This document shows positions 5,375-56,688 of a DNA stretch of 64,000 nt, piece by piece. The position numbers were made by a program, and so were the translations under genes. The stretch spans positions 1-64,000 of the forward strand of contig JAXLNO010002227.1 in the NCBI GenBank assembly GCA_038087875.1. Direction: 5' to 3'. This DNA is from Malacoraja senta. Taxonomy: Eukaryota. A model generated the notes under the pieces. That model was not told the DNA's origin and searched no databases. It worked only from the letters and a program-made list of their open reading frames with translations. Numbering within the stretch: position 1 is the first letter of the stretch; each line of letters opens with the position of its first letter.

Positions 5375-5464
5375 CTCCAATTTTCAGAGCCACTGCAGCT
5401 CAAATGGATTCAGCCTCATCAGTGCTAGCTCAGAACAGGACAACCCTTCAACAAGTGGCTGCAG
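5375..5464 (+). CDS. PER2: PER2 exon ([30 protein letters not shown])
   Basis: acag| ... |gtaggt; conserved [12 protein letters not shown]; phase 2/2. Confidence 0.88.
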
Positions 5465-7987: not shown

Positions 7988-8027
<40 letters not shown>

Positions 8028-14000: not shown

Positions 14001-17000
14001 TGAGAGGTTTGTGGGTCTGAAGGCCAATGGTAACTTTTGCAATTACCTTAATGGTGTTTCAGTCGGGTAAAAACATGTTGGTCACTGTCAGGACAATGTG
14101 GGCTAATTTCCTTCACAATCCCCGAAAAGAACATTTCATGTGAATTGTCACCCCTTGGGTTCATCTGATGCAAAACTCATAACACACCAGAAAGAACCTG
14201 GTGGAATAACCAGAGTGATGTGAAACTGTTTGTTGCCATAATTTCATGCCGTGCCAGTGCCCTTTCAGTTGTGCACTGCTGGAGCAAGTCACCTGTTTTC
14301 ACTATTTTTGGTCTGACTCTGAACTTTACTGTCACCATCCATTTCACAGTGGAAACCAACAGCGAGATCGGAGCACCCATTACTATCCGTTTCATGTGAC
14401 GCCTTATCTTACAAAGGTTCGGGCATCTGATGATGACGATGACCAACTATGCTGCCTGATGCTTGCTGAAAGGGTGCATTCGGGATATGAAGGTGAGATT
14501 ATGATCAACAAAATTATCTTTCGCAAGGAAACACTCATTGTGTTTTCTCCTCACCCCAAATCTGCAAAATCATATTTGTTATTAAATGATGTAACATCCT
14601 TCAACCAAATTCAACCAATTTTTTCTGGCTAGCTGGAAAACTGGAAGAACGAGTCAGATAATGAGTGATTAGAACTTATTTTTAATTTAAAGGCAGCCTG
14701 GACAGCCCCCTAATGCCAGGCTGACTGCATGTACTCTTCAGAGTACGATATTTGTTAGAAGCTAACGTACACAAAGTACTGGAGCAACTCGGCAGGTCAG
14801 GCAGCATCTGTGGAGAACATGGAAAGGTGACGTCCTGGGTTGAGACCCTTCTCCCGAAAAGTCAACTATCCATGTTCTCCAGAGATGCTACCTGACCTGC
14901 CGAGTTGCTCCAGCACTTTGTGTACTTTTGTGTAATAACCAGCATTTGCAGTTCTTGTGCATTTATATGTAAAACCAAATTGATAGTTATTAATATATTG
15001 AAATTCTAAGAAGCTGTATGACCTGGTTCAAAGCATAGCACACCGTTTGTAGTTGACTACATTGAGTGTGAGAATTAGCAGACTGAGCATTATGCTTTGA
15101 AGTTTTTAACTTAATAGATGCCATTGGAAAGATCCAAGGCTAATTTAACCGATTAAAAGGGAAAATTTGATTAGACAGCACATTTTTAAAATTGTTTCAT
15201 TTTGTTTTATGTTTTATCAGCGCCAAAGATTCCCCATGATAAGAGGGTGTTTACCACCACTCACTCACCCAGCTGTGTGTTTCAGGACATTGAAGAGAGG
15301 TATGTGGAGAACTAAGTATTTTCGCAGCAATGGCGGAAAGAAACAATTTGTTTTTAATCTAAATTGTATTAAACCTTGTGTAAAATTAAATTCCAAATAA
15401 AATTACCATTCTCGAAACATGAACAAAATTGTTTTAAAAGCTAGGTTTCACCCCCTACAGGGCAAATGATATTTACCTAAATTCAGTTAAATGCTTCAGT
15501 TAGTACGTTTTGGGTAATAGTTCTGTTTTTTTTTGTTTAACTTTATTTTTAAAACAGCCTTGTATTTGACTCAATGCGTTTTTAATATCTTATTGTAAAT
15601 TGCATTGTGCAAATTATTGAATCATTCCATTTTCTTTCACAGGGCTGTTCCTCTATTAGGTTATTTGCCTCAGGATCTCATAGGAATGCCTGTAATGATG
15701 CATCTACACCCTGATGATCAACCTCTCATGCTAAGCATTCATAAAAAAAGTAAGTTTGTAGATGCAATATTTAATTATTATTATTATCTGATGGTCATTT
15801 TTTCCAGCATGGATAACAGTGGGTCGGGTAACATCTCTAGAGAAAAAGGATGGGTGATGTTTCAGATTGGGAACTTTCTTCAGACATAGATAACTGCTAC
15901 TTGATTATTTTTTATTCTTTCAGTACTGAAAAATGCTGGGCAACCTTTTGAACATTCACCAGTCCGTTTCTGCACACAAAGTGGTGAATACATCACAATT
16001 GACACCAGTTGGTCCAGTTTTGTCAATCCCTGGAGCAGAAAAGTATCCTTCATTATCGGAAGACACAAAGTCCGAAGGTAAGTGCTTTGGATTATTATCA
16101 TGAAGATTGATCAATTTAGACATTTTGCAACAAATTAGAATTGTATCTAGCAGTTACTGATTTGATGTTGTGGTATTATTTCAGTGTCTTTTTAATATCA
16201 TTTTTAACTGAGAGGTGAACAGGGATTGTTTAAAGAAAAAAGATGTAGCAAGGATGTGCAGAACTAAGGGTGTTAATGTAGAGGAAAAAAATGTATCCTA
16301 AAATTATGAATTATTTTAAATACTTTTAATTAATCAGGGTGATGATAGGGACTGAAATTATGAAGTGATTATTTTGTGAATCCAGTCGATCTGACTGCAG
16401 TTACTGCCCTAGTATTCAAAAAACAAAATTGGAACTATTATTATGAATATTTGCCTGTCAAATAATGGGCCATAGCAACATAATCTTTGAAATTGTACAT
16501 ATTCATAATCACATATATTAAATGATGACAGATGTAAAATGGGTACTCAGTCTTGTATCTCCCCTTCAACTTCTGATATGTAGAGGTCCTTTGAATGAAG
16601 ATGTGTTTGCTGCTCCGGGCTGTAGTGAATTGAAGGCATTTCATCCTGAAATACAGACCATCACTGAGCAGATTCAACAGCTCTTGCTGCAGGTAAAACT
16701 AATTCACATTGATGAGTGTTTTCAGATTTAAATGCAATTTGTGTCTAATTCAGTGCTTTAAATTCTATTAAGACAGTTATGCTTTCTTATTTTAGCCTGT
16801 TTACAATAATCGTTCCAGTGGGTATGGAAGTTTGGTCAGTAGTAGATCCCATGCACAGATCATCAGTGTTGCCTCTTCCATTGATACTAATGGCAACATC
16901 AATGAAGAGAGACAACTGCACAAACCTGTAAGTCATCTCTTCCACAAGCTAATTCATGCAAACAAATATGTTGATTATCATGCATAAATCAGGGGTTATG

Positions 17001-20000
17001 CTCCTAGAAATGTTTGGTATCGCAGCTTAATGCGAGGCTGCATCTACGCAGACATCAGAAATGCAAGTTGAAAAAAAATTGTGCGTTTATTTTTATTGCA
17101 TATAAATCTCGTTAGAGTAATTTTTATTCTGTATCCCAGATTTTATGGGTCTCTATTTTAGTTTAGTTAGGATATACGGTCCTTAAATTTGTAATTTCAA
17201 TTCTCCAAACTGCAGTATCGTGGGGCTTTGTATTCATTTCGTATTTGTTCAGTAGGAATTACATTTATTTCTTTATTGATCTTTAATGATTATTAATTAA
17301 TGCTTATAATCAGACAATAACATGTAGGTGATGTTGTCCATCGATAAGCCTGAAATTGTTGCTCTTAAAACAAGTAGAAAGAGCCAATTAAATGAATATA
17401 GCTTTGTAGACAAATAAATATTTGCTCTTTGTAAAACTCTTAAGAATTACAAAGATGTCTGATCGTGAGTCATAGTGACTCTCTAAAGGATTTGCATTTG
17501 TATAGCGCCTTTTGGTGATCTCCAGATATTCCGAATTACTTTGAAATCAATTAAATTATTTTTAACGTGATGTATTGCAGGAAAAGTGTATTGTAGGAGA
17601 AGATAGCAGTTAGCTTTGCACAAAAGTGGCAGTGAGAAACATATGGAAATAATCTAGTTTAGTGATGTTGACTGAGCCAAAAAATGGCTGGGCACCTGTG
17701 TTATTCTTTGAAAAATGCAAGGAATCGTTTGCCAAGAGACATAGTTTTGCCTTTCCATGGGCATTTAAATTGAGATGGGCTCAATTTAAATGCCCATGGG
17801 AAGGTGTCTTTTGACTGTGAAGCTCTCCCTTACTAATGTATGGAAATGTTGTTTTAGATTACGTTAAAGGGTGGCACTTGGTTTTGAGAACATTTGGCTT
17901 TGAGACTCTAATGATACCACCGAAACAAGTTTGTCAGCTCCCATATAGAAAATGGAGCACTGGAGTTAATAATATTTTCATTTACTCTTTGAATGCAGTT
18001 GAAAATACTGCTTTAACAATTTTCTGCCATCATTAGTTCATTCAGCAGTTGGCCTAGTACATCCTGAATTCACTATCTAGTTTTTTTGTGACTCAAAAGC
18101 AGAGTCTGCTCTTGAGCAGTCATTAATTTTGGGAGGAAATCATTAACCTTTAGTCCCTTGTCTCTTTCTTTCAGATGGTGGTTTGGAAAGCTGGTAAAGA
18201 TCCCCACACAGGAAGAATTCGAGGACAGACAGAATTCAACAAAATAAAGAGTGAATCAAAGTGCAGACACAGAACTGGTAATAGACTTAATTATTTTGCA
18301 GTCATTATCTAGGCATATACGTAAATGATTTAAACAAATTCTGAGTGAAAAGCACCATGAGTCCAAGAATGACATTTGCCATTACAGCTGTGCTTGTTTC
18401 ATTCACTCTTATTCTGTGAATATGGACCTGATGTAGTCATTTGGATTTACATAGAAAACATCAATGTAAGGAACAATGTAAACATGTTGCTATTTGCCTT
18501 TAAATACTTTGGGACTACAATTTTACTTGAATATGTATACTTTTTCAATATTCAGTTCCTACCATTTTTGAGAACCAGATAAGAATAAGACGAAGGGAGT
18601 CTGGCTATAATACATCTAGCTTCATTTTGACTGAAGTATTTGAAAAGCCAATTTAAATAAATATGACCTGTTTTTTTTTTTAAATTAAGGGAAAACTAAC
18701 AAAAGACTTGATCTCTCCTTACTTCAGAATTTTACGCATTGTTCTCATTGTAGAAGGGCATATATTTTGCAGGAACACAAAAAGAGACAAGTAAACAGAC
18801 TAAAGATGTTAAAGCCAGCCCATCCAAGGGTACTGGAACAAGTAGTGCTGGAAAGAACATGCTCGTGGATGAACCAAGATGTGAGGAACATGCTGGATAT
18901 TGCTATCAGCAAATCAATTGTCTGGATAGTGTAATAAGGTGAGTGGCATTCTGGACCTGAACAAATGTATTTACCAAAACTACAAGGCTTTATTTGTTGA
19001 CCTGGATTTTATCATCAGTTGTGAAGTGACAACTCTCATGAATGGCCTTTAAGAAAGCAGCCACAGAGATACTTGGATCTCTGTGAAGTACATTTCATCT
19101 TTCCTAACATAGGTTGCTAACTGACACCAGCCAGCCCCAGTGACCTGGATCGATCCTGACCTTGGGTACCGTCTGCATGGAGTTTGGACGTTCTGCCTGA
19201 CACGACATGGGTTCTCTCCGGGTGCTCCGGTTTCCTCCCACATTCCAAAGACGTGCGAGTTTGCAGATTAATTGGCTTCTGTAAATTCCCCCCCCTTGTG
19301 TGCAGGATAGAACGAGGGTATGAGTGATCACTGGTCAGTTTGGACTCGGTGGCCCGAAGGGCCTGTTGCCGTGCTGCATCTTAAAACTAAAACCAGCTCC
19401 AGTAGAAATCTTGGGCTCAGCAATAGTAATGGCAACCAGCAGGCTGAGTACCCAGAGCTCAAACAAGAAAGTTTAAAATAAAACACAAGTTTTAATCAGC
19501 TTAAATATTGTAGCATGCGACGTAAAAGTTGAAACATACACATATTGAGCCTCCTTTGAATCATGGTAGTTGACTTTTCGGCAAATGTATCAATCCTTTT
19601 GCTCATGTGAAGGTGGCAGGTATATAGATTTGGATATCCTCTGCTATTTCAGTGTAAAAAATGCACGGCATCTTTTACATCCAAGGTTTATTGCTTTACC
19701 TGAAACAAGTCACGTTCGACAGTGTGGCACACTTTCAATGCCACACTGAAGCATCAACTATGTTCAGAAGTTAGCCTGATGGCCTGCTGAGTCGGGCGAG
19801 ACGGCACCATTGAGCCACATTGACCCTTTTGACTTGTAAGATCAGAAAATATTTGCTTCATCACTGTTTAAAACGCACATACACACTTTTGTCTTGTGCC
19901 CTTTTTAGATACACCAGAATACTGCTTTAAAGTTGAGAGAAAAATGATTAAATAATATGTCGAATGAGTCTGTTTCTCTCTTTTCTGTTACCTCGTTGAT

Positions 20001-23000
20001 TTTTGTTACTTTGGTATTTTTGCAGATATCTGGATAGCTACAATATTCCGTGGACTACAAAACGGAAGTGTGGTTCTTCATCGCCATCGGATGACGACAA
20101 ACGAAAAGTTGATATCGTGAATGATTGTAAAGGTATTTACCAAGTCTGAAATTGAGGTGTTTAGTTTTGTTTCAAATTACCTACCAAGCTACAGAATGTA
20201 CGGAACGTCTGACTTGATTCAAAGATTTAATCTGTATGGTGCCATGAGGTTTCTGAGGCTTATTAGCCTATCTTTATTGCTTTAAAAACAAACCCAGATG
20301 CTAGAAACAAAATGTTGGAGGTCACAGAATGTCACGCAGCATCTCTGAAGAAAGAAACAATTATTATTCCAGTTCTGATCAAGATCTGAAAAATTAACTC
20401 TGTTTCTATCTCCAAGAATGCTGCCTGATTTATTAAATATTTCCATTATTTAGTTTTGTATATATATATATATTTTTTTGCTCAACATATCTTAGTCATT
20501 TAGTAACCACTGAGTGTTTATCGAAAGCCAAATTCGGTATGTTTCACAAAGTCATCCATCGGAGATAAAGTATAAATGCGAGTATTTGACCTGCGGAATT
20601 GCTTTCCTTGTAGCTCCATTAAAGTCTGCAAAGAAGATGCCTTCTGGAGCAGTTGTTGGCACACTTCTGGCACCACGCGCCTTGCGAAGGAAGGCAGCGA
20701 GCGTCACCAGTCGAGGAAGTTACAGCAGCACCATTGTTCATGTGGGAGACAAGAAACCGCAGGCAGATGCAGGTACTGAAATTCACGTTCTAAAAGATCT
20801 CTCAAGAGGAGGTGCAAGTTGGTTAATACACGCACTGCAAGCATTTCTGTGAAGCTTCAATGTCCTGACCTGAGCATGGAAGGAGAAGAATATTGATTTT
20901 TAGTGACCAATAAATGCGATATTTAATAATTTCACAGCACCCACAACTTTTTTTTTTAGCACACTTGACGTAGCAAAATCATTTTGCAGTATCTCACAGG
21001 ATTAAAATGTCATTAATTGTAGGCCACATAAAGAGATGGTAGGGCCATAGCTCAGAAGCTTTGTCTAAAAGGTAGAGTTTGTGAAGGACACAGAGTGCTG
21101 GAGTAACTCGGCAGGTCAGGCAGACATGCTGAGTTACTCCAGCACTTTGTGTCCTTTTGTGTATAAACCAGCATTTGCAGCTCCTTGTTTCTAGATGTTG
21201 TGAACATGTTAAGTTAGGAAACTGGAATGGAGGTGGAGAGTTTTAGTTCCATGGGTTAGGGCCTTGGCAGCTGAACACATGGTCTTCCAACATGGAGCAA
21301 TGAAGCACCAAAATTAGAGGAGCATGGATTACTATGGAAAATATGCCAGAGGAGACTACAGAGGTGGAAAAGACTGTGTGGAAGAACTAAAGTTTTAAAT
21401 TTGAACTATTAGCGAGCCAGGTTCCAATGTAGATTATCAGGCACCGAGATGGTGAATGAACAGAACTTACTGTGATTTTAGCCCTGTGATGGCTATTTAG
21501 TGTGATTTATGGTTAAAAAAATGTAAGTTCTTGAGGCATAAGTAATTTGTATTTCCCAATTGAGGTGCCCTTCTGAAGAAACAATATTAGCTCCACAGGC
21601 TATACCACAATGTTTCTGAATGCTACTTATGTGTGTACACGCAACACGTGTATTTGTTTCCCCACTCCTATGCCCAGATGTGTGGTTGCTAATTCCAGCA
21701 ATGCTACCACGGTCAAACTCATGCCTGACCAACTGGAGCACTTGCTCATTAGGGGAGTTATTATGCCATTATAGTTGATGCACTTGCCTTCATGCAGAAA
21801 AAACACCCTCTTACGCATACAATTTTAAACTTAAAATCTTGACAGAAATCCTATTGGAGGATGGACTTGGCATTGCAGATCCAGCAGAGAACATGACATC
21901 TGCTACGCTGGTCACCACAGCATCTTCTGTGAACCTGGAAAAGGAAGCATTCAAGAAACTCGGTCTCACCAAAGAAGTTCTAGCTGCTCATACACAGAAA
22001 GAAGAGCAGATATTTTTGAGCAAGTTCAAGGAGTTGAGTAAACTAAAACCATTTGGAGCTACTTGCAAATCCTCTTTGCAATATCGGCACAAAGAATATT
22101 CAAGGGATCGTGGTAAGATTTTACAAATAAGGGTTTTTAAATTAATTTTACTTGTAAGCATACAAAATGTGTTGCTGTATATTATCTACGAGAAGAGGCA
22201 ATTGAGGATCAATGTACCATGTTTCATTTCGGGCTAAATTTAGCATATTATCCTATGGTTTTTGTTTTTGTTTTGTTAAATTCTCATGTAGCCTTGCCTG
22301 TTATAGTCATTCCAGTTGCCTTCATGGAACTTTTATAAACTGCTTCTTGGACGATCTGCCAATGTCTTGTCTCTGATTGCTAAAATAAGTTTGAATTGTG
22401 GAGAATCTTTGTTTGAGCTTCAATTTTAAACAGTTAATTTCAGGAGTTGTGGGACCAATATCTATGTCACTCCTTTCATCAACCTTTCAATATAAAAATG
22501 TCCAGAATAAGGTTAGAAGCAAATACTTACAAGTCCCATTTGTTTCCTTTGTAGCCTCTCGAGGATTTGCGTGGAACCGTGGAGAGCCCGGGCACAAAAA
22601 AAGCGGGAAGAATAGGAAGCCTAAAACGAAGCGCATCAAGCAGCAAGGATCATCTGATGGCGCGGCAAGCGGAAGAACCAATCATAGACTCCACCCTTGG
22701 CCCGCACCAATTACTGCACTCATACCTACCTACCAGCTGCCGATGTTTCCAACCCCTGGAGGCATGCCTTTTGCAGCTGACCCATCTCTGGCCAACTTTG
22801 CTGCTCAGGCTCTTCATTACAATCCTCAGACTCCACCATTTTCCGCGCCACTCGTATCCCCGCTGGTGGCAGTTGTGTTGCCCAATTACATCATGTCTCC
22901 GGGACCCGAGACGGCGCACCAGCCAATTTTTGCAAGTAAGCCGCCATTCCCTTCGCAACCAAACTTTTTACCTGCATGGAATTTATTCAAGGCTCCGCCA

Positions 23001-26000
23001 GCCTTTGCACCGCAGTATCGTGACCAGCCTGCACCAGGGAGTCAAGGGCAACAAGGCCACACTTCCCCTCCAAATTTCCATTCTAGGTCCATTTCACCTT
23101 TGCAGCTGAACCTTCTGGATGTGGGGCCCGGATCTACGAAAGCAATTGGACTTGTAGCTGGAAATGAATTAATGGCGGACCGAAGAGTAATGACAAGCAA
23201 CATGAACGGTACAAATGTGGGCACCATTGCAAAGGACGAAGCAGATCTTGTAAGTGGCGTACAAATTATAAACAATAATTGGATTAAATTTCTGAGAAAA
23301 ATAAATCGAGAAAATTGAGGACAGTGTAAATAGAATAAAGTCTCTGAGCTTTCCTTCTGGGCCCTCCCTGCATCTGATACATTTGTGCATGAATTGTGCC
23401 TGGCTGCCACTTCTACTAGGGGGATTTTGATGTGCGCCTGCTCACCCATAGATGTGAGCGCTTGTTTAGAAGAAGATATTCATCGTACTCCTGAGGTCTT
23501 CAGCATTAGCCAAGGGGACCACTCTGAGCTGGTCCCACTCCCAATCTGTGAGGTCCTGTTCTGGAAACAGATTTGAACTTGCCCACTCCTTCATTGTAAC
23601 CCTTTCATTCCCTCCCCTACCTGTTCCCGATCCAATTCACTCCCTCAATTCTAGCACCCATCCCCCATTGCCATCTTCCAACGACTCTACATTCAACCAC
23701 TAATCTATAGACCTGACACTTCCATGCCACTCACACCAACTGATCCCCTGGCTGTCAGCAATCGACTGCAATGGCGCATGATGCCAATTGCCCAGTCTCT
23801 AAAGCTCTTTGTCCCAGAATAAAGTGGGGAGAAAACATTGTGTCTGGAAAAACTCTTAAATGGGACAAGGATTTAAAATTGACCCATTTAAAAAAAAATG
23901 TCATCCATACTTCTCCATTATAATTTCCTGCGTTATTTTTAAATTGCATATGTTGCACCCTTTTTAATTCACTTCCTCCAACCCCCCCCTTCCCCGTACT
24001 TTGTTTTTTCATGGTGAGAAGATGAATAAGCAACAATGTTTAGACATTTGCCATTAACTTGTGGTCCATCGTATTGTCTCCTAGACAGTATTGTTAGCCT
24101 ACATTATCCTGACGATACACAAGACTGATACCCCATTACTCAGTAACGCCATGTGCTGTATACCATGTCCAAAATGTCTGTAGCAATTCTTTTATTTTTT
24201 TAATTCACTATGCAGCAATTTGACATTTTAATTAATAATATATTGCCTGTCTGGTGTGAACATATTGTATGGTTTTTTTTTGCTCTCTAAAGAATGAATC
24301 CCCTACTGAAGCCCAGAACAGTGACTCTCACTCCACTTCTACTGACATGCTGAAGCTGTTATTGCAGTCAGACGTCGGCTCTGCCGGCTCGGGGAGTATG
24401 GAATCGACAAGGTCCGGCTCCTCGGGCTCTCCGTCCAATGGTTGTGGAATGTCCGGAACTGACACAGGTAACTTTGTCCTTTTGTCTTAACCTAACCCAT
24501 AATGTAACACTAACAACTGTCTGAATTATCAGTGGATCTATTCTTTTTTTTTAAACAAAAGATCCATGTCGCCCATGGTTTTCTTTGCTTAAGAGCTTGT
24601 GTAAGTTAACTGATGGGTTGCTTTTGCTTGGGGTTGGGTGACAAAAATAAATAAACAGCACATTAGATCAGACCATCTATTGCTCTGGAAGGAGTTAACC
24701 TGTTTAATAGAATACATCTCCGACCATGGCAACACTCTGGCAATGGTTGGAGATGGCAAAGCATTTTCCAAGGCTCGTATGGTCCTTGAAAGTCCTGGAA
24801 TTTGAATCTGTTTTCAAGGCCTTAAGTCCTTGGATTTATCATGGGTCCTTGAAAGTCATTGAAATAGTGGAGACTTTGAAGCAGGCAGGGACAGTACAGG
24901 TTTGCAGGGACTCGTTGAAAAACAAAGTTTTCCATTATGGTTTCAGATTGAACAACCAAGAGATGAGTAAATGGACCATCAGTGCTCTATTGAAGTACGA
25001 ATATAGATAGGTTAACCATCTTGTGTGTAATTATTATGTAGTTTAGTGTCGTTCTCTGCAACCAGGACTAATGGATTGACTGATCACCTTCTCAGATTTC
25101 CCTGAAAATCAGTGTCTGTACATCAGAGCACACAAGTAACACAACAGAAAACAAGGTCTCAACTCCAAATTCCAATAGGCATTTGGCAATAATTCGAGCT
25201 ATATTCATGACTTCGAAGGAACTTTGAATTGAAAGTTGATTTTTCTGCTGTGCTTTTTGTACCAGAGGTGTGCAAAACATGATTTTCAATCAAATTTGAG
25301 ATGGAGACCAACCAACCTTCTTTCTTACTTTTATTTGGTACAGAATCAAATCATCCAATACGAAGCAATTTATATAAAAGTCTCCAATAAACCATCAATG
25401 TTTGCTGGATTTTGGTCCTTGAAGATTGGATTTTTGGACCTTAAGTCCTTAAAGTCCTCGAATTTAAAGCTGTTCCAAGTGTACAAACCCTGATATTCAC
25501 CAAAGACATGTGGGCTTGTACGTTAACTGGCCTTTGTAAACTTGCAGCTAATATGTAGGGAGTGGATGGGGAAGTGGAATACCGTGCAACTAGTATGTAC
25601 GGGTGATCAATGCTTGGCATGGACTCGGGCCAAAGGGCCTGTGAACATGCTGTATCTCCAAAATAAACCAAACCAGAAGGACTGCAACAGTTCCAGAAGG
25701 TGGCTCAAGTGGAGAGCCAAATAAAGTGAAAGGTGGAGAGCCTAATTCTCCAGATCAATTTGGGGGAGGCAATAGATGCTTATCTTGCCTTTGTTTTTCT
25801 TTGTTTGTCATGATTAGGTAGTAGCTGCTTGAGCAGCAGCAAATATTTTGGAAGCAACGACTCTGACAATGAAAAAATAGACGCGAGAACCATGATGACC
25901 TATCAACTACCATTCAGGTAAGTGCCCAAAATCCCAATTGTGTTGACTCCAACTTCAAAGGCTCTCCATATTGTTCTGTCTTAAGGCGAAAGAGTACCTA

Positions 26001-29000
26001 GGGAGAGGTTAAAGATCAATAAGGTCATGTACGCATCGAACCAAAGAAATGGGTGAGGTGTTCAATGAATATTTGCTGTTTGGCTTCACAATGTAGAAAG
26101 ACATAGAATCAGAATCACACTTTATTCGCCAAGTATGTTTTGCAACATACGAGGAATTTCATTGGCCAGGTCAGTCATACACTTAAAAGCAACAGATCAC
26201 TCAAAAACACATTTTAACATGAACATCCACCACAGTGACTCCTACACATTCCTAATTGGCGAAATACAAGTCCCTTCCCTTAGTTCTTCCTCGGTCTTGG
26301 GCCTCGAGCCCCCGTTGACGGGACGATCTTGACTCCCGTAGCCGGCGGCGTTCGGGCCCTCTGCGTCGAGGCGATCAGCTCCTGCATTGGGGGGGGTGTC
26401 AGCTCCCCCGCGCTGGGCGATCGAACTTCGCGTCGGGGTTGGTCGAACCTTCTGTGACGTTGGAGCTCCCGACCAGCCTCTCCCGACTGCAAGCTCTTGA
26501 TGGTAAAGTCTGCGGTGGGAGCGATCCCAGGCAAGGGATCAGCTCCGATGTTAAGTCCGCGCCCTGCGGTGGGGCTCACAGTCCGAGGAGGCTTCCAGCT
26601 CCAGCGATGGAAGGCCACAGAACACGCCGGAGAATGTGATCTGAAAATTAATCACATCTCGGGCAAGGTAGGAACTTGAAAAAAAAAATCACCCGATCCC
26701 CTCCCCCCTCCCCCACATAAAACAAACCGAAGAACATTCAAACAAACTTTAAACACTAAAAAATAACAAAAAGAATGGAAAAACGAACAGACTGCCGGCA
26801 GGGCAGCCATCGCCCTGGCGCCCCTGGTGGAAAGATGCTAGAGAGGTTAGTAATGATCTCTTCGAGAGATCTGCATTACAGAAGAGAAGGTGCCTGTGGT
26901 GTTAATACATACAAAAGAAGAAAAATCCCCGGGACCAGACCAAGTGTATCCTAGGACATGGTGGGAAGCAATTGGTAGCCACTGGCAGAAATATTTATAT
27001 CATTTGTATGGAGAGAGTTTTCAGTTATCGCTTGCTTCTGGGCTAGTCCCACATGGTTAGCTCACTTTCTATTCCTGTTGACTCCACAGAAATAAAAGTA
27101 AAGCCCATACAATAATAGGCAGGCAGACAATCAATGATGCCATCTGACCCGCCAAGGCCCATGTTCAACAAAGTCGTGGCTGCAGAAAGGAAAGAAGAAC
27201 AAGAAGTTTAGTTTAATGCAGGGAAAACCTACAGGGAGAATACTCAAAAGTATTCATTTTGAGGGTATGAGAATTGGAATTGCACTGACCAGAAAGAACG
27301 TATTTATAGTATGGCCTTGGTTCATGTTTTCTGGGCAGTGCTTCGAATACAATAAAACTTTGTTAATACAGCACAGTTGGAACTTGGTGCTAGATTGAGA
27401 TTTTTCTTTTGGATATCACTCTCATTATTACCTCAAAACACTTCACTTGTTTTGGATGTCACATAGTGGCATAATTTTTCCAGTGAACCCTGTGAGTTTT
27501 AAAAGGGAATTGGGAATCTGAAAGTAAAGAGAGCATGGGAGTCTGGGCCTGGTGAGCAATGATGTTGGTGAATCCAGGAATTAGATGGCAGGTTATCAGA
27601 GTTGCACTTCAATAGAATTTTTAATTCAATCTCCACTTTTCCCCTTGTGGTGAAGGTGCTTTTCCTTTCTGTAGTACGTCTCCTCGATTGCTAGCAGTTC
27701 TCTTATTACATTAACTTATTACACACTGGCATGTGGTTTAGCTGGTAGGTGGCTGGTAGTTTGTTCAACCATGGAGGACATCCAATCTAAGTCGAGTCTA
27801 GTTTTCATCCCACATGCACACTCAAGGCCAAGTTCACCAAATGACAATTAGTGGATGTATCTCTGAGCTATTTTGAAAGTTCTACTTCATTGCCCTCGAG
27901 GACCTCTCCATGTTTGTGGTGCTTCAGCCTTTGCCCTGGGTGAGATCAACTAATTATTTTAAGGTTCAAGGTTTGCGTCAGTAACACTATTCTGTCGGGG
28001 GACCTTACGGGATTTCTAATCCTGGCAGTGATTAAATAATTTAATCTCCGAGTCCAATTTTGTCCGAAGAGTAAAAGATGCCCAATTGTATTTACAAGGT
28101 AATAATCTAATTGCAAGACCTGTAATCTGATCTTTGGGTTTCAGATAATACAAAGATCCAGCATAACATTAAATAATTCATAGCCCTCTGAAATCTAAAG
28201 ACAAGAGAATCATTCTGCACTATCTATTTCATAATAAATTATATGTACTGTAGCTGTATGTCTGATTTCTGCACTACTTTTCAGCCAACATTAACCATTA
28301 AAGTTAATAACCCAGTCTTTGGCCCATGAAATAGAAACACTGCTGCATAAAAGGTCAATTTTATCTGGAATTTGATCCTGAGACCTTGTATCTCTGTGCC
28401 ATCAGTGGGCTTCCTGTTTCCAACTCTTTACGTTACTCGAGTAGCAGTCCATCTGCTACTGAAACGCTCATACAAATTAACTTTTCCTATGTCATCAGGA
28501 CAGCATTTCCCTCGACTCTTTTTAAACTGGGCTGCTCAAAGCTCTGGTGCCCATCTTTTAGCTTGCCGCTAGTTCTAATTACCCATCACCCTCAACCTTT
28601 TGACTTAAACTGATTCCTAACCCTAAGCAACAATCCTGAATTTAAGATGTGCTTAAGTGTGATTCCAGTATTTGAACATTTAATGTGTTCGTCTGCTTCC
28701 AATTCTCTTCAGGTTTATTCTTCACTTTATCTGGAGCATTAACTGATTGTTTTAAATGGGTTACACGGTCATTAAAATGAAAAATGCATTAACCACCATG
28801 CATGGATTGTGCAGTGAAATTCTAGTTCTGAGTGACTTTGCCTTACCTTGATACCAATCATTTTGTAGAGAGATGGCTGAGATTCATATGTCAAGCACAT
28901 GTATTGCTGATGTTTTTTTTATAATATTTATTATCTCCCAGTGCAGTATAATCAGCATGCCTTTCTTTCTTACAAATCAGGGACATTGTAACAGTTTTGA

Positions 29001-32000
29001 AGGAGGACAGGGTAAAGCTGAAAGTGTTGCAGAGAAACCAACCCAAATTCACAGAGAAACAAAGAAAAGAAATTGCTGAGGTCTTTAAAACGGGTGCAGC
29101 ACAAAAAACCATTGGCATCATGGTAAGTCCATTTTTAACTTCCTGAACTTGGCAGGAGAAATGAATTATATTTTCATGATAAAATCTGCACCCATTTTTA
29201 TCACATGCATTCCATATTACCTGATAAAGCTGCTGCTTGTATGGCTCAACAATATATTGCAAATCCTATTTCTTGAACATCATTGACTGCACCATGGGAA
29301 TTTTTAATAGCTCTGCTACAAACCAGCCTTTGTCTGCCCTGTGTTGGACTGCCAACAATGGGGTTAAATTAAAGGCCATGTTTTGCAATTGAGTATTGTT
29401 GTTTCCAAACTTATTTTATGTTTAAGATAGACATAAAATGCTGGAGTAACTCCGTGGGACTGGCAGCATCTGTGGAGAGAAGGAAAGGGGGACGTTTTGG
29501 GTCGAGACCCTTCTTCAGAACCCCCTTTTTAGCTTTCTCAACTGTATGAACTCTGTTTGACAATTTGAGTTGTGATCTAATCGCTCAATTTATATTATTG
29601 TCCCAAGTTTTAATATTATCCAAGTTTTAATATAATACTTCATTTGCACTCAGACGTGGATTAAATTTCAGAAATGAAAAGCTTCTTAAGCAGGTGGTTC
29701 TACAGTTTTTATAGGAGCACATACTCTGAAACTGAGGCAATTTCCCATAATAATAATGGCAGGATTTAATGTATATCCCCTACCTCCTTCCAAATAAATT
29801 CCAAATGAAGTAAAATGCATCAATCGTAGAAACTAATTATTTGAGTGATATAAAGCATGAAAAATGTTTTATATATTTGAACATTTCCAAACTTTTGGAA
29901 AAGTGGTGCAGTGTGAATGAATGCTGGAAATCTGAGCAAAAAGAGAAATTTGTGGAAACTCAACTTAAGAGTTTAGTTTAGAGATGCACCGTGGAAACAG
30001 GCCCTTTGTCCCACCGAGTCCGTGCCGACCAATGATCACCCATACACTAGATCTATCCTACACACATAGGGACAATTTTGGAGAAGCCAATTAACCTACA
30101 AACCAGCACGTCCTTGGAATGTGCAAAAAAAAATCACACGGTCGCAGGTAGAACTTACAAACTTCTTACAGATAGCACCCGATGTCGGGATCGAACCTGA
30201 GTCCCTGGCGCTGTAAGGCAGCAGTTCTGCCGTTGCGCCATTGTGCTGCCCCTTGTGGAGAAAGAAATTAGTGCTTTATGTTTCAGGTCAATGTTGTTTT
30301 ATCAAGAATTTAGGTCTTGATGCTCCACAAACACAGATCGATTGTGCGTAGTCTCTCCTCTCTGCCTTAAGCTTCACACCTCTCCCCTTCTGCACTTTAA
30401 GGTCTAATAGCTCTCTTCTTAAAAGTTGTGATGAATGATTCATAGCCTAAAATATTAGTTCTAGATGCTGCCTAAATCGCGTTGCACCAACATTTTAATT
30501 TACTCCCACACATTTGTAAAACACACAAATTGTCTTGTTCCACACAAATTGTAGAACACTCACAAATACGAAGATAGACACAAAATGCTGGAGTAACTCA
30601 GCGGGTTAGGCAGCATCTCTGGAGAGAAGGAATGGGTGACATTACGGGTTGAGACCCTCCTTACAAACACGACATTTGTGTTTGGGTCTGCTTATGTGAC
30701 ACCCATGAAGCAGTAAAAATCGCCCACAGTATGAATATTTCAACTGAAGTGTCTGAACATAAATTTGAACCAAACCAGCGTGCAACATTTACCATTGTGA
30801 TGGGGGGGGGGGGGGGGGTTCATCCATAAAGAAAATACAACAAGCCTGCTCTGCAAGAGCAATAAAACTGACAGCACTCTGATCTGTTTTGTATTTAAAT
30901 ATCCTCAAGCTGTTATTTTAAGAATCCGAGACTTTGCAGTGCTCTTTGTGAATCACCCATTAAAAGCAAGTTGGGATCAATTCCCAACTTCTTGTTTGAA
31001 ATGCCATAAAATTTAAAGTGTGCAGAATTTATTATAGCATTCTATATTTATTATATAATTTATTATAGCATATAGGTATGCAAGTAAAACTAAACACCTT
31101 TTTATACCAAGACAAATTTGACCTGTCCCCTTGTGACACATCACTGAAGAAAACTAAATGGTAATAATAAATGTGGACTAGGAATTTTGTCATGAGTGGA
31201 CTGGGCTCTCAATTTAATGTAATTGTTTATTAACAAAATAAAAATTCGAAAAATTGGAAAACTTGTATGAAACTGGAAAATTACTTTCATTTCAACAATT
31301 ACAAATAAAATATAAACTCGGAAATAATCAATATTTTAAATATTTTCAAATATGCGACTATTTGAAAAAAATACAAAAGATAATAACCCAGTAGATGTAT
31401 TGGACGAGGCAATGCAGATAAAAGCGGAATCAGCAAACTTAATATCATATTTGTATAATATTATCTTAAATGTACAAATACCACCTACGGAGGGTATCAG
31501 AAGAGACTGGGAACAAGAGTTAGCTATTAAAATTTCAAAGGAAAGTTGGAATGAATACATATTAAACGTGCATAAATGCTCGATTAATGTAAGACACACT
31601 TTAATACAATTTAAAATTTTACATAGATTATATTATTCAAAAACTAAAATTCATAAAATTTTCCCAAATGTATCATCTATTTGTGATAAATGTCAATCCC
31701 AAGAAGCTACTATAGCACACTCATTCGTTTTCTGTACAAAAATTCAAAAATTTTGGAATGAAATTTTTGAAATCTTTACAAAGTTATTTAAAACAAGACT
31801 GATACCCAAAGCAGAATGGATTATCTTCGGTATAACGGAAGATGGTCCAGAACTAAATGTGTTTCAAAAGAAACTAATGGACTATGGGTTAATAATTGGA
31901 AAAAAGCTAATTCTAAAATTTTGGAAGAAGGCTCCAATACCAACTATAAATATGTGGATTTCAAATATGTTTGAAACATTACACCTAGAAGAGATAAGAC

Positions 32001-33467
32001 TCCTCCTAGCAGGTAAACCAGATCACTTCCACCTGACGTGGTCTGCATTTATAGAATTATCAGGTAAGGGGGGATGATAGTTGAAGAGTTGGTATGTCCC
32101 ATTTACGTAATGCTCATAAAAATATCTGTTTCTCTCTTTTTCCTCTTTCTCTCTCTCTCTTTCTTTCCTAGGGTCTATTTCTTAACTCTTTTTCTTTTGT
32201 TTTTAATTTTGCTCTTATAGGGTCTTCGTCCTTTTTTGTTGTCACATTTCCTACACTTTCACTTTTTCCTTCACTTTCTTCTTTCTTTCAATCTTTTCCT
32301 TTTCTACTGTAAAAAATAAATGGAGTACATTAATTGTAAGAAGATATAAATGATGAGTACTAATGTATGTGGTTGTAATGTAATGTACTTCTAATAAATA
32401 AAAATTAAAAAAAAATAATAATAATTGGAAAATGCATTTAGTGCACATATATATAATTGGGGAGTAGGGAGATGATCAAATAAAGCTGTGATAACTTCCA
32501 ATAAGCATTGGACTTTACAAAGCAACCATTATAATTGTCTGAAGAAGGGTCTTGACCCTTAACGTCACCCATTCCTTCTCTCCAGAGATGCTGCCTGACC
32601 TGCGGAGTTACTCCAGCATTTTGTGTCTACCTTAGATTTAAACCAGCATCTGCAGTTCTCTCCTACACATAATTGTCTGCCTGTTGAATCTTTTCATTCA
32701 CAGCTTTCCTGCAGCATTTAGTTCAGTATTGTACAATTGGTAAAATAAATAGCCGCCGGGTCTGCAACTTTTTGGCAGACAAGAAAATTAATTATTAAGG
32801 TTAGACTCCGGTCAGCATCCTGGATAAGCGATGTTTCGGGTCGGATCGGGACTCTTTTTCAGACTGAAATGTCACCTATCCACGTTCTCTAGGGGCGCTG
32901 CCTGACCCACTGAGTAACTCCAGTATGTTCTGTCATTCCTTGGTAAACCAGCAGCTGCAGTTCTTTGTTTCCACAAATCAAATGTTAACATGGACAATTG
33001 GCTTTCATGTTTTAACTGAATATAGACTTAGAATCAGCATGTTTTATTGTGATTCCTTTTGAGGCTAATGTTGGCTATAATTAAAAAAAATGACAACTAA
33101 TTTTGGGATTGTTCCTTATGACTCATAAAAATTAGAATGGTAAGAATAAAATGGAAATAATATATGACACTGCTTGTACTCTTAATGATTTTGTTTTTAT
33201 GGAAGGTGTGGAATTTGTCGTGTATATATTTGATTGTAATTCTTCTTAATTTAGGATAGAATCTTCTCTGAGAAAAATGCATCACAGAACATTTTGTCAG
33301 CATTGGATATGGAAATCCATAATCTGGAGTTTAGTGGACTGAATGAGCCAGGACACGATGTTGGCTTTCAGGCCACGAACATTGCAAATGAAGGGCAAAA
33401 CCCTTCAGAAAATGCAGACCCCAACCTGGCAGTAGAAACAAACACATTTGGAAACTCTGCAAGTTGA
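5375..33467 (+). CDS. PER2: Period circadian protein homolog 2, multi-exon gene span (21 coding exons in window, equivalent to mammalian exons 3-23; 5'-partial)
   Basis: Manually spliced exons total 3472 nt (1+3471), with all intron phases compatible, all GT-AG and no internal stop. PER motifs include [101 protein letters not shown] and MMTYQLP. PER2-type CK1BD-B/NLS and adjacency to HES6 support PER2. Confidence 0.93.
6567..6700. repeat. Penelope-related palindromic repeat arm with intact minimal hammerhead core (6665-6692, - strand)
   Basis: rc: CTGAAGA-A-GGGTCTCGACCC-GAAA-CGTC. Confidence 0.6.
7126..7325. mobile_element. PIF/Harbinger-like MITE
   Basis: TIRs AGGGCCTGTCC…GGACAGGCCCT flanked by TTA target-site duplication (7123-7125, 7326-7328). 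Confidence 0.8.
7664..7818 (+). CDS. PER2: PER2 exon ([16 protein letters not shown]...[13 protein letters not shown])
   Basis: gcag| ... |gtaggc; conserved PER N-terminal helix. Confidence 0.93.
7991..8023. repeat. (GA)n microsatellite
   Basis: Direct reading. Confidence 0.95.
8479..8600 (+). CDS. PER2: PER2 exon ([11 protein letters not shown]...SEYTSKNA)
   Basis: gcag| ... |gtaagt; ANEEYY motif. Confidence 0.93.
8810..9200 (-). mobile_element. Ancient Deu-domain SINE (SacSINE1-like) relic
   Basis: Degenerate L2-type tail and Deu-like segment; similar relics at ~17485-17960 and ~19620-19830. Confidence 0.45.
9360..9560. repeat. Palindromic (inverted-arm) Penelope-related repeat
   Basis: …GCTGGAGTAACTCAGCGGG…/…CCCGCTGAGTTACTCCAGC… arms; the family also occurs at ~21087, 29428, 30575, 32538, 40175, 43977, 45145, 45313, 47595, 48052, 48545, 49640, 59970, 60720, 61387. 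Confidence 0.8.
9704..9905 (+). CDS. PER2: PER2 exon, PAS-A ([21 protein letters not shown]...[10 protein letters not shown])
   Basis: acag| ... |gtgagt; PAS-A homology. Confidence 0.94.
11344..11890 (-). mobile_element. CR1 LINE 3' fragment
   Basis: ORF 11552..11905: [28 protein letters not shown]…[10 protein letters not shown] plus CR1 3'UTR. Confidence 0.9.
12388..12442. repeat. 28-bp tandem duplication
   Basis: GCCTCAGCAGTCGAAGATGTGGTTTCT twice. Confidence 0.9.
12721..12772 (+). CDS. PER2: PER2 exon ([18 protein letters not shown])
   Basis: ttcag| ... |gtgagt; EKSFFCRI motif. Confidence 0.93.
14350..14492 (+). CDS. PER2: PER2 exon ([20 protein letters not shown]...[15 protein letters not shown])
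   Basis: acag| ... |gtgaga; AERVHSGYE motif. Confidence 0.94.
14768..14957. repeat. Palindromic Penelope-related repeat (long hairpin)
   Basis: ~65-bp inverted arms. Confidence 0.8.
15221..15299 (+). CDS. PER2: PER2 exon, PAS-B start ([27 protein letters not shown])
   Basis: atcag| ... |gtatgt. Confidence 0.94.
15643..15749 (+). CDS. PER2: PER2 exon, PAS-B ([14 protein letters not shown]...PLMLSIHKK)
   Basis: acag| ... |gtaagt. Confidence 0.95.
15924..16077 (+). CDS. PER2: PER2 exon, PAS-B/PAC ([13 protein letters not shown]...[19 protein letters not shown])
   Basis: ttcag| ... |gtaagt; dimer-interface Trp (NPWSRK) intact. Confidence 0.95.
16584..16692 (+). CDS. PER2: PER2 exon (GPLNEDVF...[11 protein letters not shown])
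   Basis: gtag| ... |gtaaaa. Confidence 0.94.
16796..16927 (+). CDS. PER2: PER2 exon with beta-TrCP phosphodegron ([13 protein letters not shown]...HKP)
   Basis: ttag| ... |gtaagt; SSGYGS at 16814-16831. Confidence 0.93.
17750..17804. repeat. 25-bp inverted repeat with 5-nt loop
   Basis: CCTTTCCATGGGCATTTAAATTGAG-ATGGG-CTCAATTTAAATGCCCATGGGAAGG. Confidence 0.95.
18175..18277 (+). CDS. PER2: PER2 exon ([21 protein letters not shown]...RHRT), divergent
   Basis: Strong polypyrimidine tract + cag|, |gtaata; phase 0/1 bridges the neighbouring exons; weak similarity to the PER 'TFQQICKDVH..GQQ.F' exon. Confidence 0.8.
18773..18938 (+). CDS. PER2: PER2 exon, CK1-binding domain A (…[15 protein letters not shown])
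   Basis: ttgcag| ... |gtgagt; phase 1/2. Confidence 0.9.
19138..19392 (+). mobile_element. HE1-like SINE (5'-truncated)
   Basis: Family consensus body and tail. Confidence 0.8.
20026..20132 (+). CDS. PER2: PER2 exon ([27 protein letters not shown]...)
   Basis: gcag| ... |gtattt; TKRKC motif. Confidence 0.92.
20614..20772 (+). CDS. PER2: PER2 exon with FASP region (…[29 protein letters not shown])
   Basis: gtag| ... |gtactg; [15 protein letters not shown] motif. Confidence 0.93.
21846..22112 (+). CDS. PER2: PER2 exon, CK1-binding domain B ([27 protein letters not shown])
   Basis: acag| ... |gtaaga; ORF 21839..22237. Confidence 0.95.
22555..23249 (+). CDS. PER2: PER2 large exon: NLS, proline-rich region, SPLQLNLL
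   Basis: gtag| ... |gtaagt; ORF 22398..23318. Confidence 0.93.
24293..24467 (+). CDS. PER2: PER2 exon ([25 protein letters not shown]...SG-rich)
   Basis: aaag| ... |gtaact; LKLLL = LxxLL. Confidence 0.92.
25818..25917 (+). CDS. PER2: PER2 exon, shortened CRY-binding-domain exon ([34 protein letters not shown])
   Basis: ttag| ... |gtaagt; SKYFGS and MMTYQLP anchors; 100 nt, phase 1/2. Confidence 0.92.
26105..26830 (-). mobile_element. Non-autonomous GC-rich element with (GATTCT)n tail, inserted in a CR1 ORF2 relic (~26040-27000)
   Basis: Shares its 5' head motif with the 2611-3465 element; flanks encode EMGEVFNEY… and [12 protein letters not shown]. Confidence 0.65.
28981..29122 (+). CDS. 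PER2: PER2 exon ([47 protein letters not shown])
   Basis: atcag| ... |gtaagt; VLKEDR.KL and QP.FTE.Q..E motifs; phase 2/0. Confidence 0.93.
29969..30253 (-). mobile_element. HE1-like SINE
   Basis: Family consensus. Confidence 0.8.
31262..32422 (+). mobile_element. 5'-truncated L1/Tx1-clade LINE (ORF2 C-terminus with Cys-rich zf-RVT region, 3'UTR, A-rich tail)
   Basis: ORF 31352..32077 ([11 protein letters not shown]…CDKC…HSFVFC…FW); AATAAA + A-tail; candidate TSD AATTGGAAAA at 31252-31261 and 32423-32432. Confidence 0.88.
33255..33467 (+). CDS. PER2: PER2 terminal coding exon ([31 protein letters not shown]...GNSAS*)
   Basis: ttag| acceptor, phase 0, 70 open codons to TGA, followed by an AT-rich UTR-like sequence; positional similarity to the PER2 tail (ECVYCEN...). 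Confidence 0.8.
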   Translation, partial: DRIFSEKNASQNILSALDMEIHNLEFSGLNEPGHDVGFQATNIANEGQNPSENADPNLAVETNTFGNSAS

Positions 33468-55611: not shown

Positions 55612-56069
55612 TTACCACGGCCTCCAGACCGACTTGGAGTACATTGCAGGGGATGTGTTCTCTGTCCGACAGCTGTCTACCACTTTATCTTGCAGCAAGG
55701 GTGCCGGTGCAGCAGTGGACGGGTCCGCGTCGTCCAGATCGGAGCAGGCATCATCGCTGGAGGCAGAGGATACAGGAGACAGTGCCGGGGAGCAGAGCTG
55801 TTCTCTACCTCCGGGGGACGCCAATAACAGGCACATATCGTCAGGCCCAGACCATATACTGGAGCTACTCTCAGCCATCAACTCGCCCAGTAAATCCTGA
55901 AAGTGGTCTTCGCTCAGTGGCATGGACTCCAGGAGGTGGTTCAGTAAATCGGCGGCTACGGCAGAATCGATCCCCGGACAGTTTGAAACGAAAGTGTGGA
56001 CCTCGTGCATGCACTGGATGTAGCCGGCTGCAAACCTCTCATTCGCTTCCTCGTTAAACCTATCCTGTT
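55612..56069 (-). CDS. HES6: HES6 exon 4 (Orange domain, WRPW)
   Basis: gcag|AA CAG GAT…; ORF 55612..56079 ending WRPW*. Confidence 0.96.
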
Positions 56070-56688
56070 CTGCCAACAAGGAGAGAAGGAAGAGTTTTTT
56101 TCCCTTAAAAGAAACAGCTTCCTATCGTAACAATTGCCATTAAAATATATTGTTCGCATTCTGCAAAAAAAAAAGCTTATGCAATACATGTATATATTTT
56201 GCAATAGATTCCCAACTCCCTGCAATTTCCACTCCCCTGCCTACTCACCAACATTTCTGTTGCAAAGTATGTTTTGGACGCGTTTCACCGTCATCTCCAG
56301 CACCTCTGCATTCTCCATTTTCGACTGCAGCTGAGAATATTTAGCACATTTTAGATTTTTATTTTTTTAAATCACGTACTGAAATCTGAAGGGATTTTTT
56401 CCCCCCCATCAGTACAGCTTAAAAAAAAAACTCACTTCCGTATCCGCCAATATCAGTCTCAGCTCTTGCAAGCTTTCGTTAATGCGGGCTCGCCTCTTCT
56501 TCTCGATCAATGGCTTGCGAGTCTGCAGTTAGCAAAAGAAACGCCCCGGGTTAGAGTGAATTTTTTTTTTGTCTCGTGCATAGCCCCCCGATTAAAAGTT
56601 GCCCTTTTAAATGTACCTTGCGATCTTCTTTGACTGCATAAAAGTCTCCTTCATCCCTGACAGATCCCGGTTTGCAGGCTGGAGCCAT
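55612..56688 (-). CDS. HES6: Transcription cofactor HES-6 (bHLH-Orange-WRPW), 4 exons, 232 aa
   Basis: Spliced protein MAPACKPG…EDRK|TRKPLIEKKRRARINESLQELRLILADTE|LQSKMENAEVLEMTVKRVQ…|EQDRFNEEANERFAAGYIQCMHEVHTFVS…LLNHLLESMPL…SVWRPW; short bHLH loop typical of HES6. Confidence 0.96.
56249..56330 (-). CDS. HES6: HES6 exon 3 (helix 2)
   Basis: tcag|CTG CAG TCG…GTT G|gtgagt. Confidence 0.95.
56436..56522 (-). CDS. HES6: HES6 exon 2 (basic region/helix 1)
   Basis: gcag|ACT CGC AAG…GAA|gtgagt. Confidence 0.95.
56617..56688 (-). CDS. HES6: HES6 exon 1 coding part
   Basis: ATG GCT CCA…CGC AAG|gtacat. Confidence 0.92.

What the first reader, a model, noticed from the sequence alone, without database searches (positions are those of the whole stretch)
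25818..25917. In-frame deletion of the LQDPIWLLMA core of the CRY-binding domain
The exon reads [27 protein letters not shown] (34 codons, 100 nt). The mammalian PER2 equivalent (recalled) is ~65 residues, with FIKCVLQDPIWLLMA between SKYFGS and MMTYQLP. Both anchors lie in one continuous exon, so the missing ~31 codons cannot be a separate exon elsewhere.
Basis: partly seen in the sequence, partly recalled or inferred. Interest (0 to 1): 0.85.

Follow-up and report, generated by a model that had tools for sequence, protein, structure and literature searches.

The report
Skate PER2 lacks its CRY-pocket helix
The clock gene PER2 of this skate, like that of every other skate checked, has lost by a clean 19-codon deletion the short helix that in mammals tucks into cryptochrome beside its CLOCK-binding pocket, while the part that anchors PER2 to cryptochrome is kept, making skates a natural deletion mutant of one module of the PER-CRY interface.

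Summary
Exon 25818-25917 (+) is a 100-nt, AG/GT-bounded PER2 exon. It has 12 residues between SKYFGS and MMTYQLP, against 42 in mouse and human PER2.

It is not an assembly error, a private allele or a pseudogene:
- Contigs from two samples of the same species match exactly.
- Two related species carry the same-length exon in DNA.
- RNA-like contigs of two further relatives and a full-length transcript contig of a related skate splice this 100-nt exon in.
- The annotated Rhinoraja longicauda PER2 has it as well.

The roughly 30 missing residues come from two events. An 11-12 codon loss in the disordered linker is shared by all batoids. A single 57-nt (19-codon) deletion with the same breakpoint is shared by all skates. 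The second removes the equivalents of mouse PER2 1126-1144: Gln1135, Asp1136, Trp1139 and the alpha1 helix.

Calling this the "core" of the CRY-binding domain is wrong. Published mutagenesis places the binding anchor in the C-terminal half. Skates keep that half, under purifying selection (dN/dS about 0.27).

[quoted passage not shown] This is a new natural variant of a known interface. I found no paper describing it. The scan's other notes lie on this same window.

The parts
25818..25917 (+). PER2 exon S, the third-from-last coding exon, 100 nt. It encodes the start of the CRY-binding domain in the short, skate-type form.
   Evidence: AG/GT boundaries and reading frame. Aligns to transcript contig L001 positions 3455-3554. 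RNA-like contigs of two relatives join it to both neighbouring exons.
25878..25879 (+). Junction of the 57-nt (19-codon) skate-wide deletion. It is ambiguous by 2 nt because of an AG microhomology.
   Evidence: DNA alignment of window, Rhinoraja (L002), Narcine (L003) and the L001 cDNA shows one gap of 57 columns with the same ends in all three skates.
24293..24467 (+). PER2 exon R, the exon before S (serine- and glycine-rich linker).
   Evidence: blastn of L001 and splice context. Joint 24467>25818, GT..AG, in X19 and X20 contigs.
28981..29122 (+). PER2 exon T. It encodes the retained CBD helices that clamp the CRY C-terminal helix (equivalents of mouse 1158-1207).
   Evidence: Matches PDB PER2 CBD chains at E 2e-9 and Pfam Period_C at E 1.8e-10. 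Joint 25917>28981 in X19 and X20 contigs.
33255..33467 (+). Last PER2 coding exon with stop codon. The position of the mammalian CxxC zinc clasp reads DRIFSE.
   Evidence: L001 alignment and translation. Alignment of orthologues.
5375..33467 (+). PER2 gene body in the window: 21 coding exons, all with GT-AG introns, and an open frame of 1153 codons. The first coding exon of relatives (about 82 aa) was not found in the window.
   Evidence: Spliced alignment to L001 and translation. ML tree places it in the PER2 clade.
55615..56121 (-). Neighbouring HES-family (Hairy Orange) open frame, as expected for the HES6-PER2 neighbourhood.
   Evidence: Pfam Hairy_orange at E 1.1e-14. That HES6 lies next to PER2 in human is my own knowledge.

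Best explanation
This is the PER2 orthologue of a skate. On the stem of the skates (Rajiformes), one 57-nt in-frame deletion inside this exon removed the equivalents of mouse PER2 1126-1144. That is the only ordered N-terminal element of the CRY-binding domain: the alpha1 helix with Trp1139, which is buried in the cleft between the two CRY lobes, plus Gln1135 and Asp1136, which hold the CRY serine loop next to the secondary (CLOCK PAS-B) pocket.

An older 11-12 codon loss in the disordered linker, on the batoid stem, accounts for the rest of the roughly 30 missing residues.

The gene stayed functional: intact frame, canonical splicing, expression in relatives and purifying selection.

Inferred mechanism: skate PER2 still binds CRY through the retained C-terminal half. 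That half comprises the alpha3 helix with the Asp1167 equivalent, the LKLL-type patch and the following loop, and it encircles the CRY C-terminal helix and competes with FBXL3. [quoted passage not shown]

Shown: the deletion, its breakpoint, its phylogenetic distribution, its splicing and the selection on the rest of the domain. Inferred: the retained CRY binding and the lost serine-loop control.
For: Reality and distribution:
- Identical contigs from two samples of the species.
- A gap-free 100-nt exon in DNA of two relatives.
- Spliced RNA-like contigs of two more relatives, with joints 24467>25818 and 25917>28981.
- A 4029-nt transcript contig with a full 1239-aa CDS from a related skate.
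- Rhinoraja longicauda (Arhynchobatidae) has the same form in protein and locus.

Single event: the same 57-nt gap and the same splice sites against Narcine. Skates are monophyletic at 100/100 in the PER2 tree.

Polarity: sharks, chimaera and bony vertebrates keep the segment. Stingrays, sawfish and electric ray keep a shorter version that still has the DPIW motif.

Gene alive: 21 exons, all GT-AG, no stop codon. dN/dS is 0.34 overall and 0.09 in the PAS region.

Retained half constrained after the deletion: exons S+T give dN/dS 0.27 between two skates and 0.15-0.19 against Narcine. The Asp1167 equivalent and the LKxL patch are conserved.

Function of the parts: N-terminal-half alanine mutants keep CRY1 binding, while C-terminal-half mutants and charge changes at 1171-1174 abolish it. 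Trp1139 is buried by the serine loop (PMC4157330). PER2 CBD contacts at 1135/1136 remodel the serine loop and change CRY affinity for CLOCK:BMAL1 (PMC7064333).
Against: - No binding was measured, and no skate CRY sequence was available, so retained CRY binding is extrapolated from mouse mutants that substitute residues rather than delete the helix.
- The zinc-clasp cysteines, which strengthen the mammalian complex, are also absent in skates, so total affinity may be much lower.
- In this species the retained half carries extra private changes: a 3-codon loss, Asp1206-equivalent to Gly, and 8 of the lineage's 29 private substitutions (p = 7e-4). Binding may therefore be further weakened here.
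- No RNA run of this species itself was found.
- dN/dS values rest on small counts.
Confidence: 0.7

Rival explanations
1. CRY-uncoupled PER2. The deletion, together with the missing zinc clasp, abolishes PER2-CRY binding in skates or at least in this species. PER2 would then act only through its PAS, CK1-binding and other regions.
For: Three of the mapped contact elements are gone or altered in this species: alpha1/Trp1139, the CxxC motif and Asp1206. The mouse deltaCxxC CBD binds CRY2 much less well (PMC4157330). The window lineage concentrates its private substitutions in exons S+T, with roughly 8 nonsynonymous to 1 synonymous change.
Against: The clamp helices stay conserved across three skates, with dN/dS 0.27 after the deletion, which is not expected for a useless domain. 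Mouse N-terminal-half mutants and D1206A keep nanomolar CRY1 binding. Zinc-site CRY1 mutants still sustain rhythms.
Confidence: 0.17
2. The helix is supplied elsewhere, either by an alternative exon or isoform of this gene, or by another PER paralogue with an intact CRY-binding domain. In that case the deletion would be functionally buffered.
For: No RNA of this species was available. PER3-type paralogues could have escaped my searches, because only the best 120 rows are listed per search.
Against: No open frame with a DPIW-like motif lies on the + strand between the exons; the best tblastn hits have E >= 0.1 and fall on the wrong strand or outside the gene. Transcripts of three relatives carry only the short exon. 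No chondrichthyan PER1 or PER3 appeared among the 34 long cluster representatives found with the PAS-A exon, nor in two CBD searches. A published gene-count table lists Per1/Per2/Per3 as 0/1/0 for Callorhinchus (PMC11457068 supplement).
Confidence: 0.1
3. Artefact or decay: an assembly collapse, a mis-called exon, or a PER2 pseudogene.
For: None found.
Against: Independent contigs from two samples and from several species, together with spliced transcripts, agree on the exon. The 1153-codon frame is intact with canonical introns. There is strong constraint on the PAS region.
Confidence: 0.01

Closest known systems
Mouse and human PER2 CRY-binding domain in complex with CRY1 or CRY2 (PDB 4U8H, 4CT0, 6OF7)
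   Same: Orthologous gene and the same exon. The SKYFGS and MMTYQLP anchors are present. The clamp region matches, with RD..VLKED..KLK..Q..QP.FTE.Q aligning at E 2e-9.
   Different: The equivalents of residues 1126-1144 (alpha1, Gln1135, Asp1136, Trp1139) are deleted. About 11 linker residues are missing. The CxxC zinc ligands are absent. In this species the HPW-type motif is also shortened and the Asp1206 equivalent is Gly.
PER2 of non-skate batoids (Hemitrygon, Hypanus, Pristis, Narcine)
   Same: Same clade (100/100), the same linker loss, the same loss of most zinc cysteines and the same exon boundaries.
   Different: They keep a 157-nt exon with a DPIW/NPIW helix, whose hydrophobic face is already weakened (WLE.A or WLAKA instead of WLLMA). 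Skates lack it entirely.
Engineered mouse PER2 CBD mutants (mutA N-terminal alanine blocks, deltaCxxC, D1206A)
   Same: They perturb the same three elements that skates have lost or changed.
   Different: They are laboratory substitutions or truncations tested one at a time. mutA and D1206A keep CRY1 binding, and deltaCxxC weakens it (PMC4157330; PMC13649712). Skates combine the losses naturally and delete the helix rather than substitute it.
Mammalian PER3 C-terminal region
   Same: A PER paralogue whose N-terminal CBD module has drifted far from the PER1/PER2 consensus (bat PER3).
   Different: PER3 keeps the full-length segment with the tryptophan and the CxxC-type cysteines. It is a paralogue, not PER2.

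Membership tests
Vertebrate PER2 (Period family) | PAS-A/PAS-B core and Period_C C-terminal region | tested here: met
   The PAS-A exon finds PER proteins, best hit 87% identical at E 1e-30. Exon T hits Pfam Period_C at E 1.8e-10. The 91%-identical skate protein P0147 carries bHLH_PER, PAS-A, PAS_11, PAS_3 and Period_C.
Vertebrate PER2 (Period family) | Groups with PER2 rather than PER1 or PER3 in a tree | tested here: met
   In the ML tree the PER2 clade has 100/100 support, and the window sits inside the skate, batoid and chondrichthyan PER2 groups, each at 100/100.
Vertebrate PER2 (Period family) | Conserved neighbourhood with a HES-family gene | tested here: met
   A Hairy_orange open frame lies at 55615-56121 (-). 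Its assignment as HES6 rests on my recollection of the human locus.
Canonical PER1/PER2 CRY-binding domain (as defined by the mouse PER2-CRY structures) | N-terminal alpha1 helix with a buried tryptophan (Trp1139) and serine-loop contacts (1135/1136) | tested here: not met
   Deleted in the window and in all skates examined.
Canonical PER1/PER2 CRY-binding domain (as defined by the mouse PER2-CRY structures) | C-terminal-half clamp: alpha3 with the Asp1167 equivalent and the hydrophobic 1171-1174 patch | tested here: met
   The window reads [11 protein letters not shown], with the Asp and the LKVL patch present. The region is conserved in all chondrichthyans and has dN/dS 0.27 within skates.
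Canonical PER1/PER2 CRY-binding domain (as defined by the mouse PER2-CRY structures) | CxxC zinc ligands (Cys1210, Cys1213) | tested here: not met
   The window has DRIFSE at that position. The first Cys is absent in every chondrichthyan aligned, and both are absent in skates.
Canonical PER1/PER2 CRY-binding domain (as defined by the mouse PER2-CRY structures) | Physical binding to CRY1 or CRY2 | not testable with these tools
   No skate CRY sequence could be obtained, so no complex prediction or assay was possible.

The most novel reading that the evidence does not exclude
Chondrichthyans may carry PER2 as their only PER gene. If so, skates run a vertebrate clock whose sole PER cannot reach the CRY secondary pocket or serine loop and has no zinc clasp. 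In this species, with its extra private erosion of the clamp, PER may be largely or wholly uncoupled from CRY. That would be a natural test of whether PER-CRY docking, and PER control of CRY-CLOCK:BMAL1 affinity, are essential for vertebrate timekeeping.
Probability: 0.15. Interest if true: 0.8.

Novelty: new variant of a known kind. Interest (0 to 1): 0.55.

Why it matters
The PER-CRY interface is the heart of the vertebrate clock's negative limb. Its N-terminal module and its zinc clasp have been described as strictly conserved among vertebrates (PMC4157330). Elasmobranch sequences show otherwise:
- The first zinc cysteine is missing in all chondrichthyans aligned.
- The linker is shortened in batoids.

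This separates, in nature, the anchoring function of the domain from its modulatory function on the CRY serine loop and secondary pocket. It also provides ready-made proteins (shark, stingray, skate) for testing what each module contributes to CRY stability, CLOCK:BMAL1 repression and period. If PER2 is the only PER gene in these fishes, there is no paralogue to hide the effect.

Tried and rejected
- Alternative exon. tblastn of eight orthologous alpha1 segments and a motif scan of all six frames found nothing credible in the gene's introns.
- RNA of the same species. Neither search for runs found an RNA run of organism A. I used RNA-like contigs of relatives instead.
- Paralogue question. I found no chondrichthyan PER1 or PER3 in three ways: the Latimeria PER1 CBD search, naming 30 long cluster representatives, and the Hemitrygon PER2 CBD search. 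Listings are capped at 120 rows, so this is absence of evidence, especially for PER3. I left the third protein search unused because no query would have been decisive.
- Loci. Narcine and Rhinoraja were used instead.
- Complex prediction and CRY co-evolution. No CRY sequence could be obtained from the window or from searches, so neither was attempted.
- Relative-rate test with Rhinoraja as outgroup. Overall the window branch is the shorter one (29 private changes against 59), so there is no gene-wide acceleration. Only the concentration of changes in exons S+T stands.
- Literature. Four searches found no description of this deletion or of clock genes in skates.

Full report
**1. The observation**

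The stretch 25818-25917 on the + strand is preceded by AG and followed by GTAAGT. In frame 3 it reads [32 protein letters not shown], with a split codon at each end.

A search of the solved-structure sequences matched only PER2 CRY-binding-domain (CBD) chains. In those chains SKYFGS and MMTYQLP are 42 residues apart (6OF7_B, 4U8H_B). Here they are 12 apart. The next exon (28981-29122) matches the same chains at E 2e-9 and Pfam Period_C at E 1.8e-10.

**2. Gene and organism**

- The PAS-A exon (9704-9907) finds PER proteins in an exhaustive search. The best hit is 87% identical.
- A CBD-region search with that hit returned annotated PER2 proteins of 14 elasmobranch species. It also returned an unnamed 1239-aa protein, P0147, from a 4029-nt Logan contig.
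- That contig, L001, carries a full CDS and must be a spliced transcript.
- Aligned to the window, L001 defines 21 exons between 5375 and 33467. All introns are GT-AG. The concatenated frame is open for 1153 codons and is 91% identical to P0147.
- An ML tree puts the window inside PER2 (100/100), inside batoids (100/100) and inside a skate clade with Rhinoraja longicauda and the L001 species (100/100). Rhinoraja is a rajiform of the family Arhynchobatidae.
- A Hairy-Orange (HES-family) open frame lies downstream on the minus strand. This fits the HES6-PER2 neighbourhood that I recall from human.

**3. Artefact, allele or pseudogene?**

- Contigs of two samples of the same species span 25596-26132 without a single difference.
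- Contigs of two related species cover 25790-26134 with 26-27 substitutions and no gap. Those species therefore have the same 100-nt exon. Within the exon the changes are four or five synonymous and three amino-acid replacements.
- RNA-like contigs of two further relatives (X20, X19) show GT..AG joints from 24467 to 25818 and from 25917 to 28981. The exon is thus spliced in at exactly this length.
- The L001 transcript and the annotated Rhinoraja protein and locus have the same form.
- dN/dS against the L001 species is 0.34 for the whole gene and 0.09 for the PAS region.
- The gene is therefore alive, and the short exon is fixed in skates.

**4. How the difference arose**

An alignment of 22 PER2 orthologues shows three states:
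- Sharks, the chimaera Callorhinchus (named), coelacanth, gar, bichir, a caecilian, a bird and the platypus have the full segment with a QDP[IVLF]W-type helix.
- Stingrays, sawfish and an electric ray lack 11-12 residues of the preceding linker but keep the helix (QNPIWLENAN, RQDPIWLEMAN, RKDPIWLAKAN).
- The three skates additionally lack 19 residues.

At the DNA level the window, Rhinoraja (L002) and the L001 cDNA share one 57-nt gap relative to Narcine (L003). The ends of the gap are the same, there is a 2-nt AG microhomology, and the acceptor and donor sites are unchanged. On the tree this is one event on the skate stem, preceded by one on the batoid stem.

No frame in the window's introns encodes a replacement helix.

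**5. What was deleted**

The 4U8H construct starts at mouse PER2 residue 1095 (PMC4157330). This puts the tryptophan of DPIW at 1139, and the skate gap then corresponds to residues 1126-1144.

According to that paper:
- The N-terminal end of the ordered CBD is embedded in a V-shaped cleft between the two CRY2 lobes, burying Trp1139.

Fribourgh et al. add two points (PMC7064333):
[quoted passage not shown] The deletion therefore removes exactly this module.

**6. What was kept**

- In the mouse, none of ten single alanine-block mutants lost CRY1 binding.
- A double block in the N-terminal half did not abolish binding either. A double block in the C-terminal half did, and so did charge substitutions at 1171-1174 in alpha3.
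- Asp1167 and Asp1206 form salt bridges with the CRY2 C-terminal helix.
- In skates the Asp1167 equivalent and the LKxL/M patch are present, and the whole stretch from MMTYQLP to FKT is nearly invariant in chondrichthyans.
- After the deletion this region stayed constrained. Exons S+T give dN/dS 0.27 between the L001 species and Rhinoraja, and 0.15-0.19 against Narcine.

That is why I read the deletion as the loss of a modulatory module rather than the loss of CRY binding.

**7. Context that raises the stakes**

- Zinc clasp. The CxxC ligands, described as conserved throughout vertebrates, are not. The first cysteine is absent in every chondrichthyan aligned, and both are absent in skates.
- Private changes in this species. 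The window lineage has a 3-codon loss in the FPWF motif and a Gly at the Asp1206 position. Eight of its 29 private substitutions fall in the 81 codons of exons S+T (binomial p = 7e-4), against 3 of 59 for the L001 lineage. D1206A alone barely changes mouse PER2-CRY1 affinity, but it abolishes WDR5 binding (PMC13649712).
- Paralogues. I found no chondrichthyan PER1 or PER3 in any search. A published table lists 0/1/0 for Callorhinchus. Most cartilaginous fishes keep both mammalian-type CRYs (PMC9498864). Whether PER2 is truly the only PER gene of skates remains untested here.

**8. Verdict**

The finding is real and clean. It is a new natural variant of a well-studied interface, not a new kind of system.

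The most likely mechanism, at about 0.7, is clamp-only CRY binding without serine-loop control. Full uncoupling, at about 0.15-0.2 and mainly for this species, is the interesting alternative. A handful of binding assays would decide between them.

Noticed in passing
window 29072-29122: Relative to two other skates, this species alone lacks 3 codons of the FPWF/SPWF motif and has Gly at the Asp1206-equivalent position (TIGIM against TIDIM). Eight of the lineage's 29 private substitutions fall in exons S+T (p = 7e-4). This was not checked against reads of this species.
   Followed up: partly
window 33255-33272: The position of the mammalian CxxC zinc clasp reads DRIFSE. In the alignment the first cysteine is absent in all chondrichthyans. 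The second survives only in some sharks, the sawfish and the chimaera. This contradicts the published statement that the zinc ligands are conserved throughout vertebrates.
   Followed up: partly
window 25850, in run X20 (organism J): The RNA-like contig of one related species carries G>A at this position, turning KYFGS into KYFRS. So even the N-terminal anchor motif is not invariant in skates.
   Followed up: no
window 25500-25700 and 26100-26250: The exon is flanked on both sides by very high-copy repeats, with summed contig depth up to millions in every elasmobranch run laid. This explains why Logan contigs break there.
   Followed up: no
window 18773-18938 and 22564-23249: Exon M has a 12-nt insertion (TGTS) and the large exon has several small indels relative to the related skate transcript. 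The large exon is only 85% identical, with dN/dS about 0.57. It is a fast-evolving disordered middle region.
   Followed up: no
window 1-5374: The first coding exon of relatives (about 82 residues from the start codon) was not found in the window by tblastn. It is either upstream of the window or too diverged.
   Followed up: partly
window 31340-32074 (+), about 36000-38200 (-) and 61727-62709 (+): Long open frames with reverse-transcriptase or LINE-like sequence lie in the last PER2 intron, downstream of PER2 and near the window's end.
   Followed up: no
whole CDS, window against L001 and L002: Synonymous distances are 0.12 (window-L001), 0.12 (window-Rhinoraja) and 0.20 (L001-Rhinoraja). This implies a very short window branch. 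It could reflect a slow lineage, or errors in the transcript contig may inflate the L001 branch.
   Followed up: no
window 55615-56121 (-): A HES-family (Hairy Orange) open frame lies downstream of PER2 on the opposite strand.
   Followed up: partly
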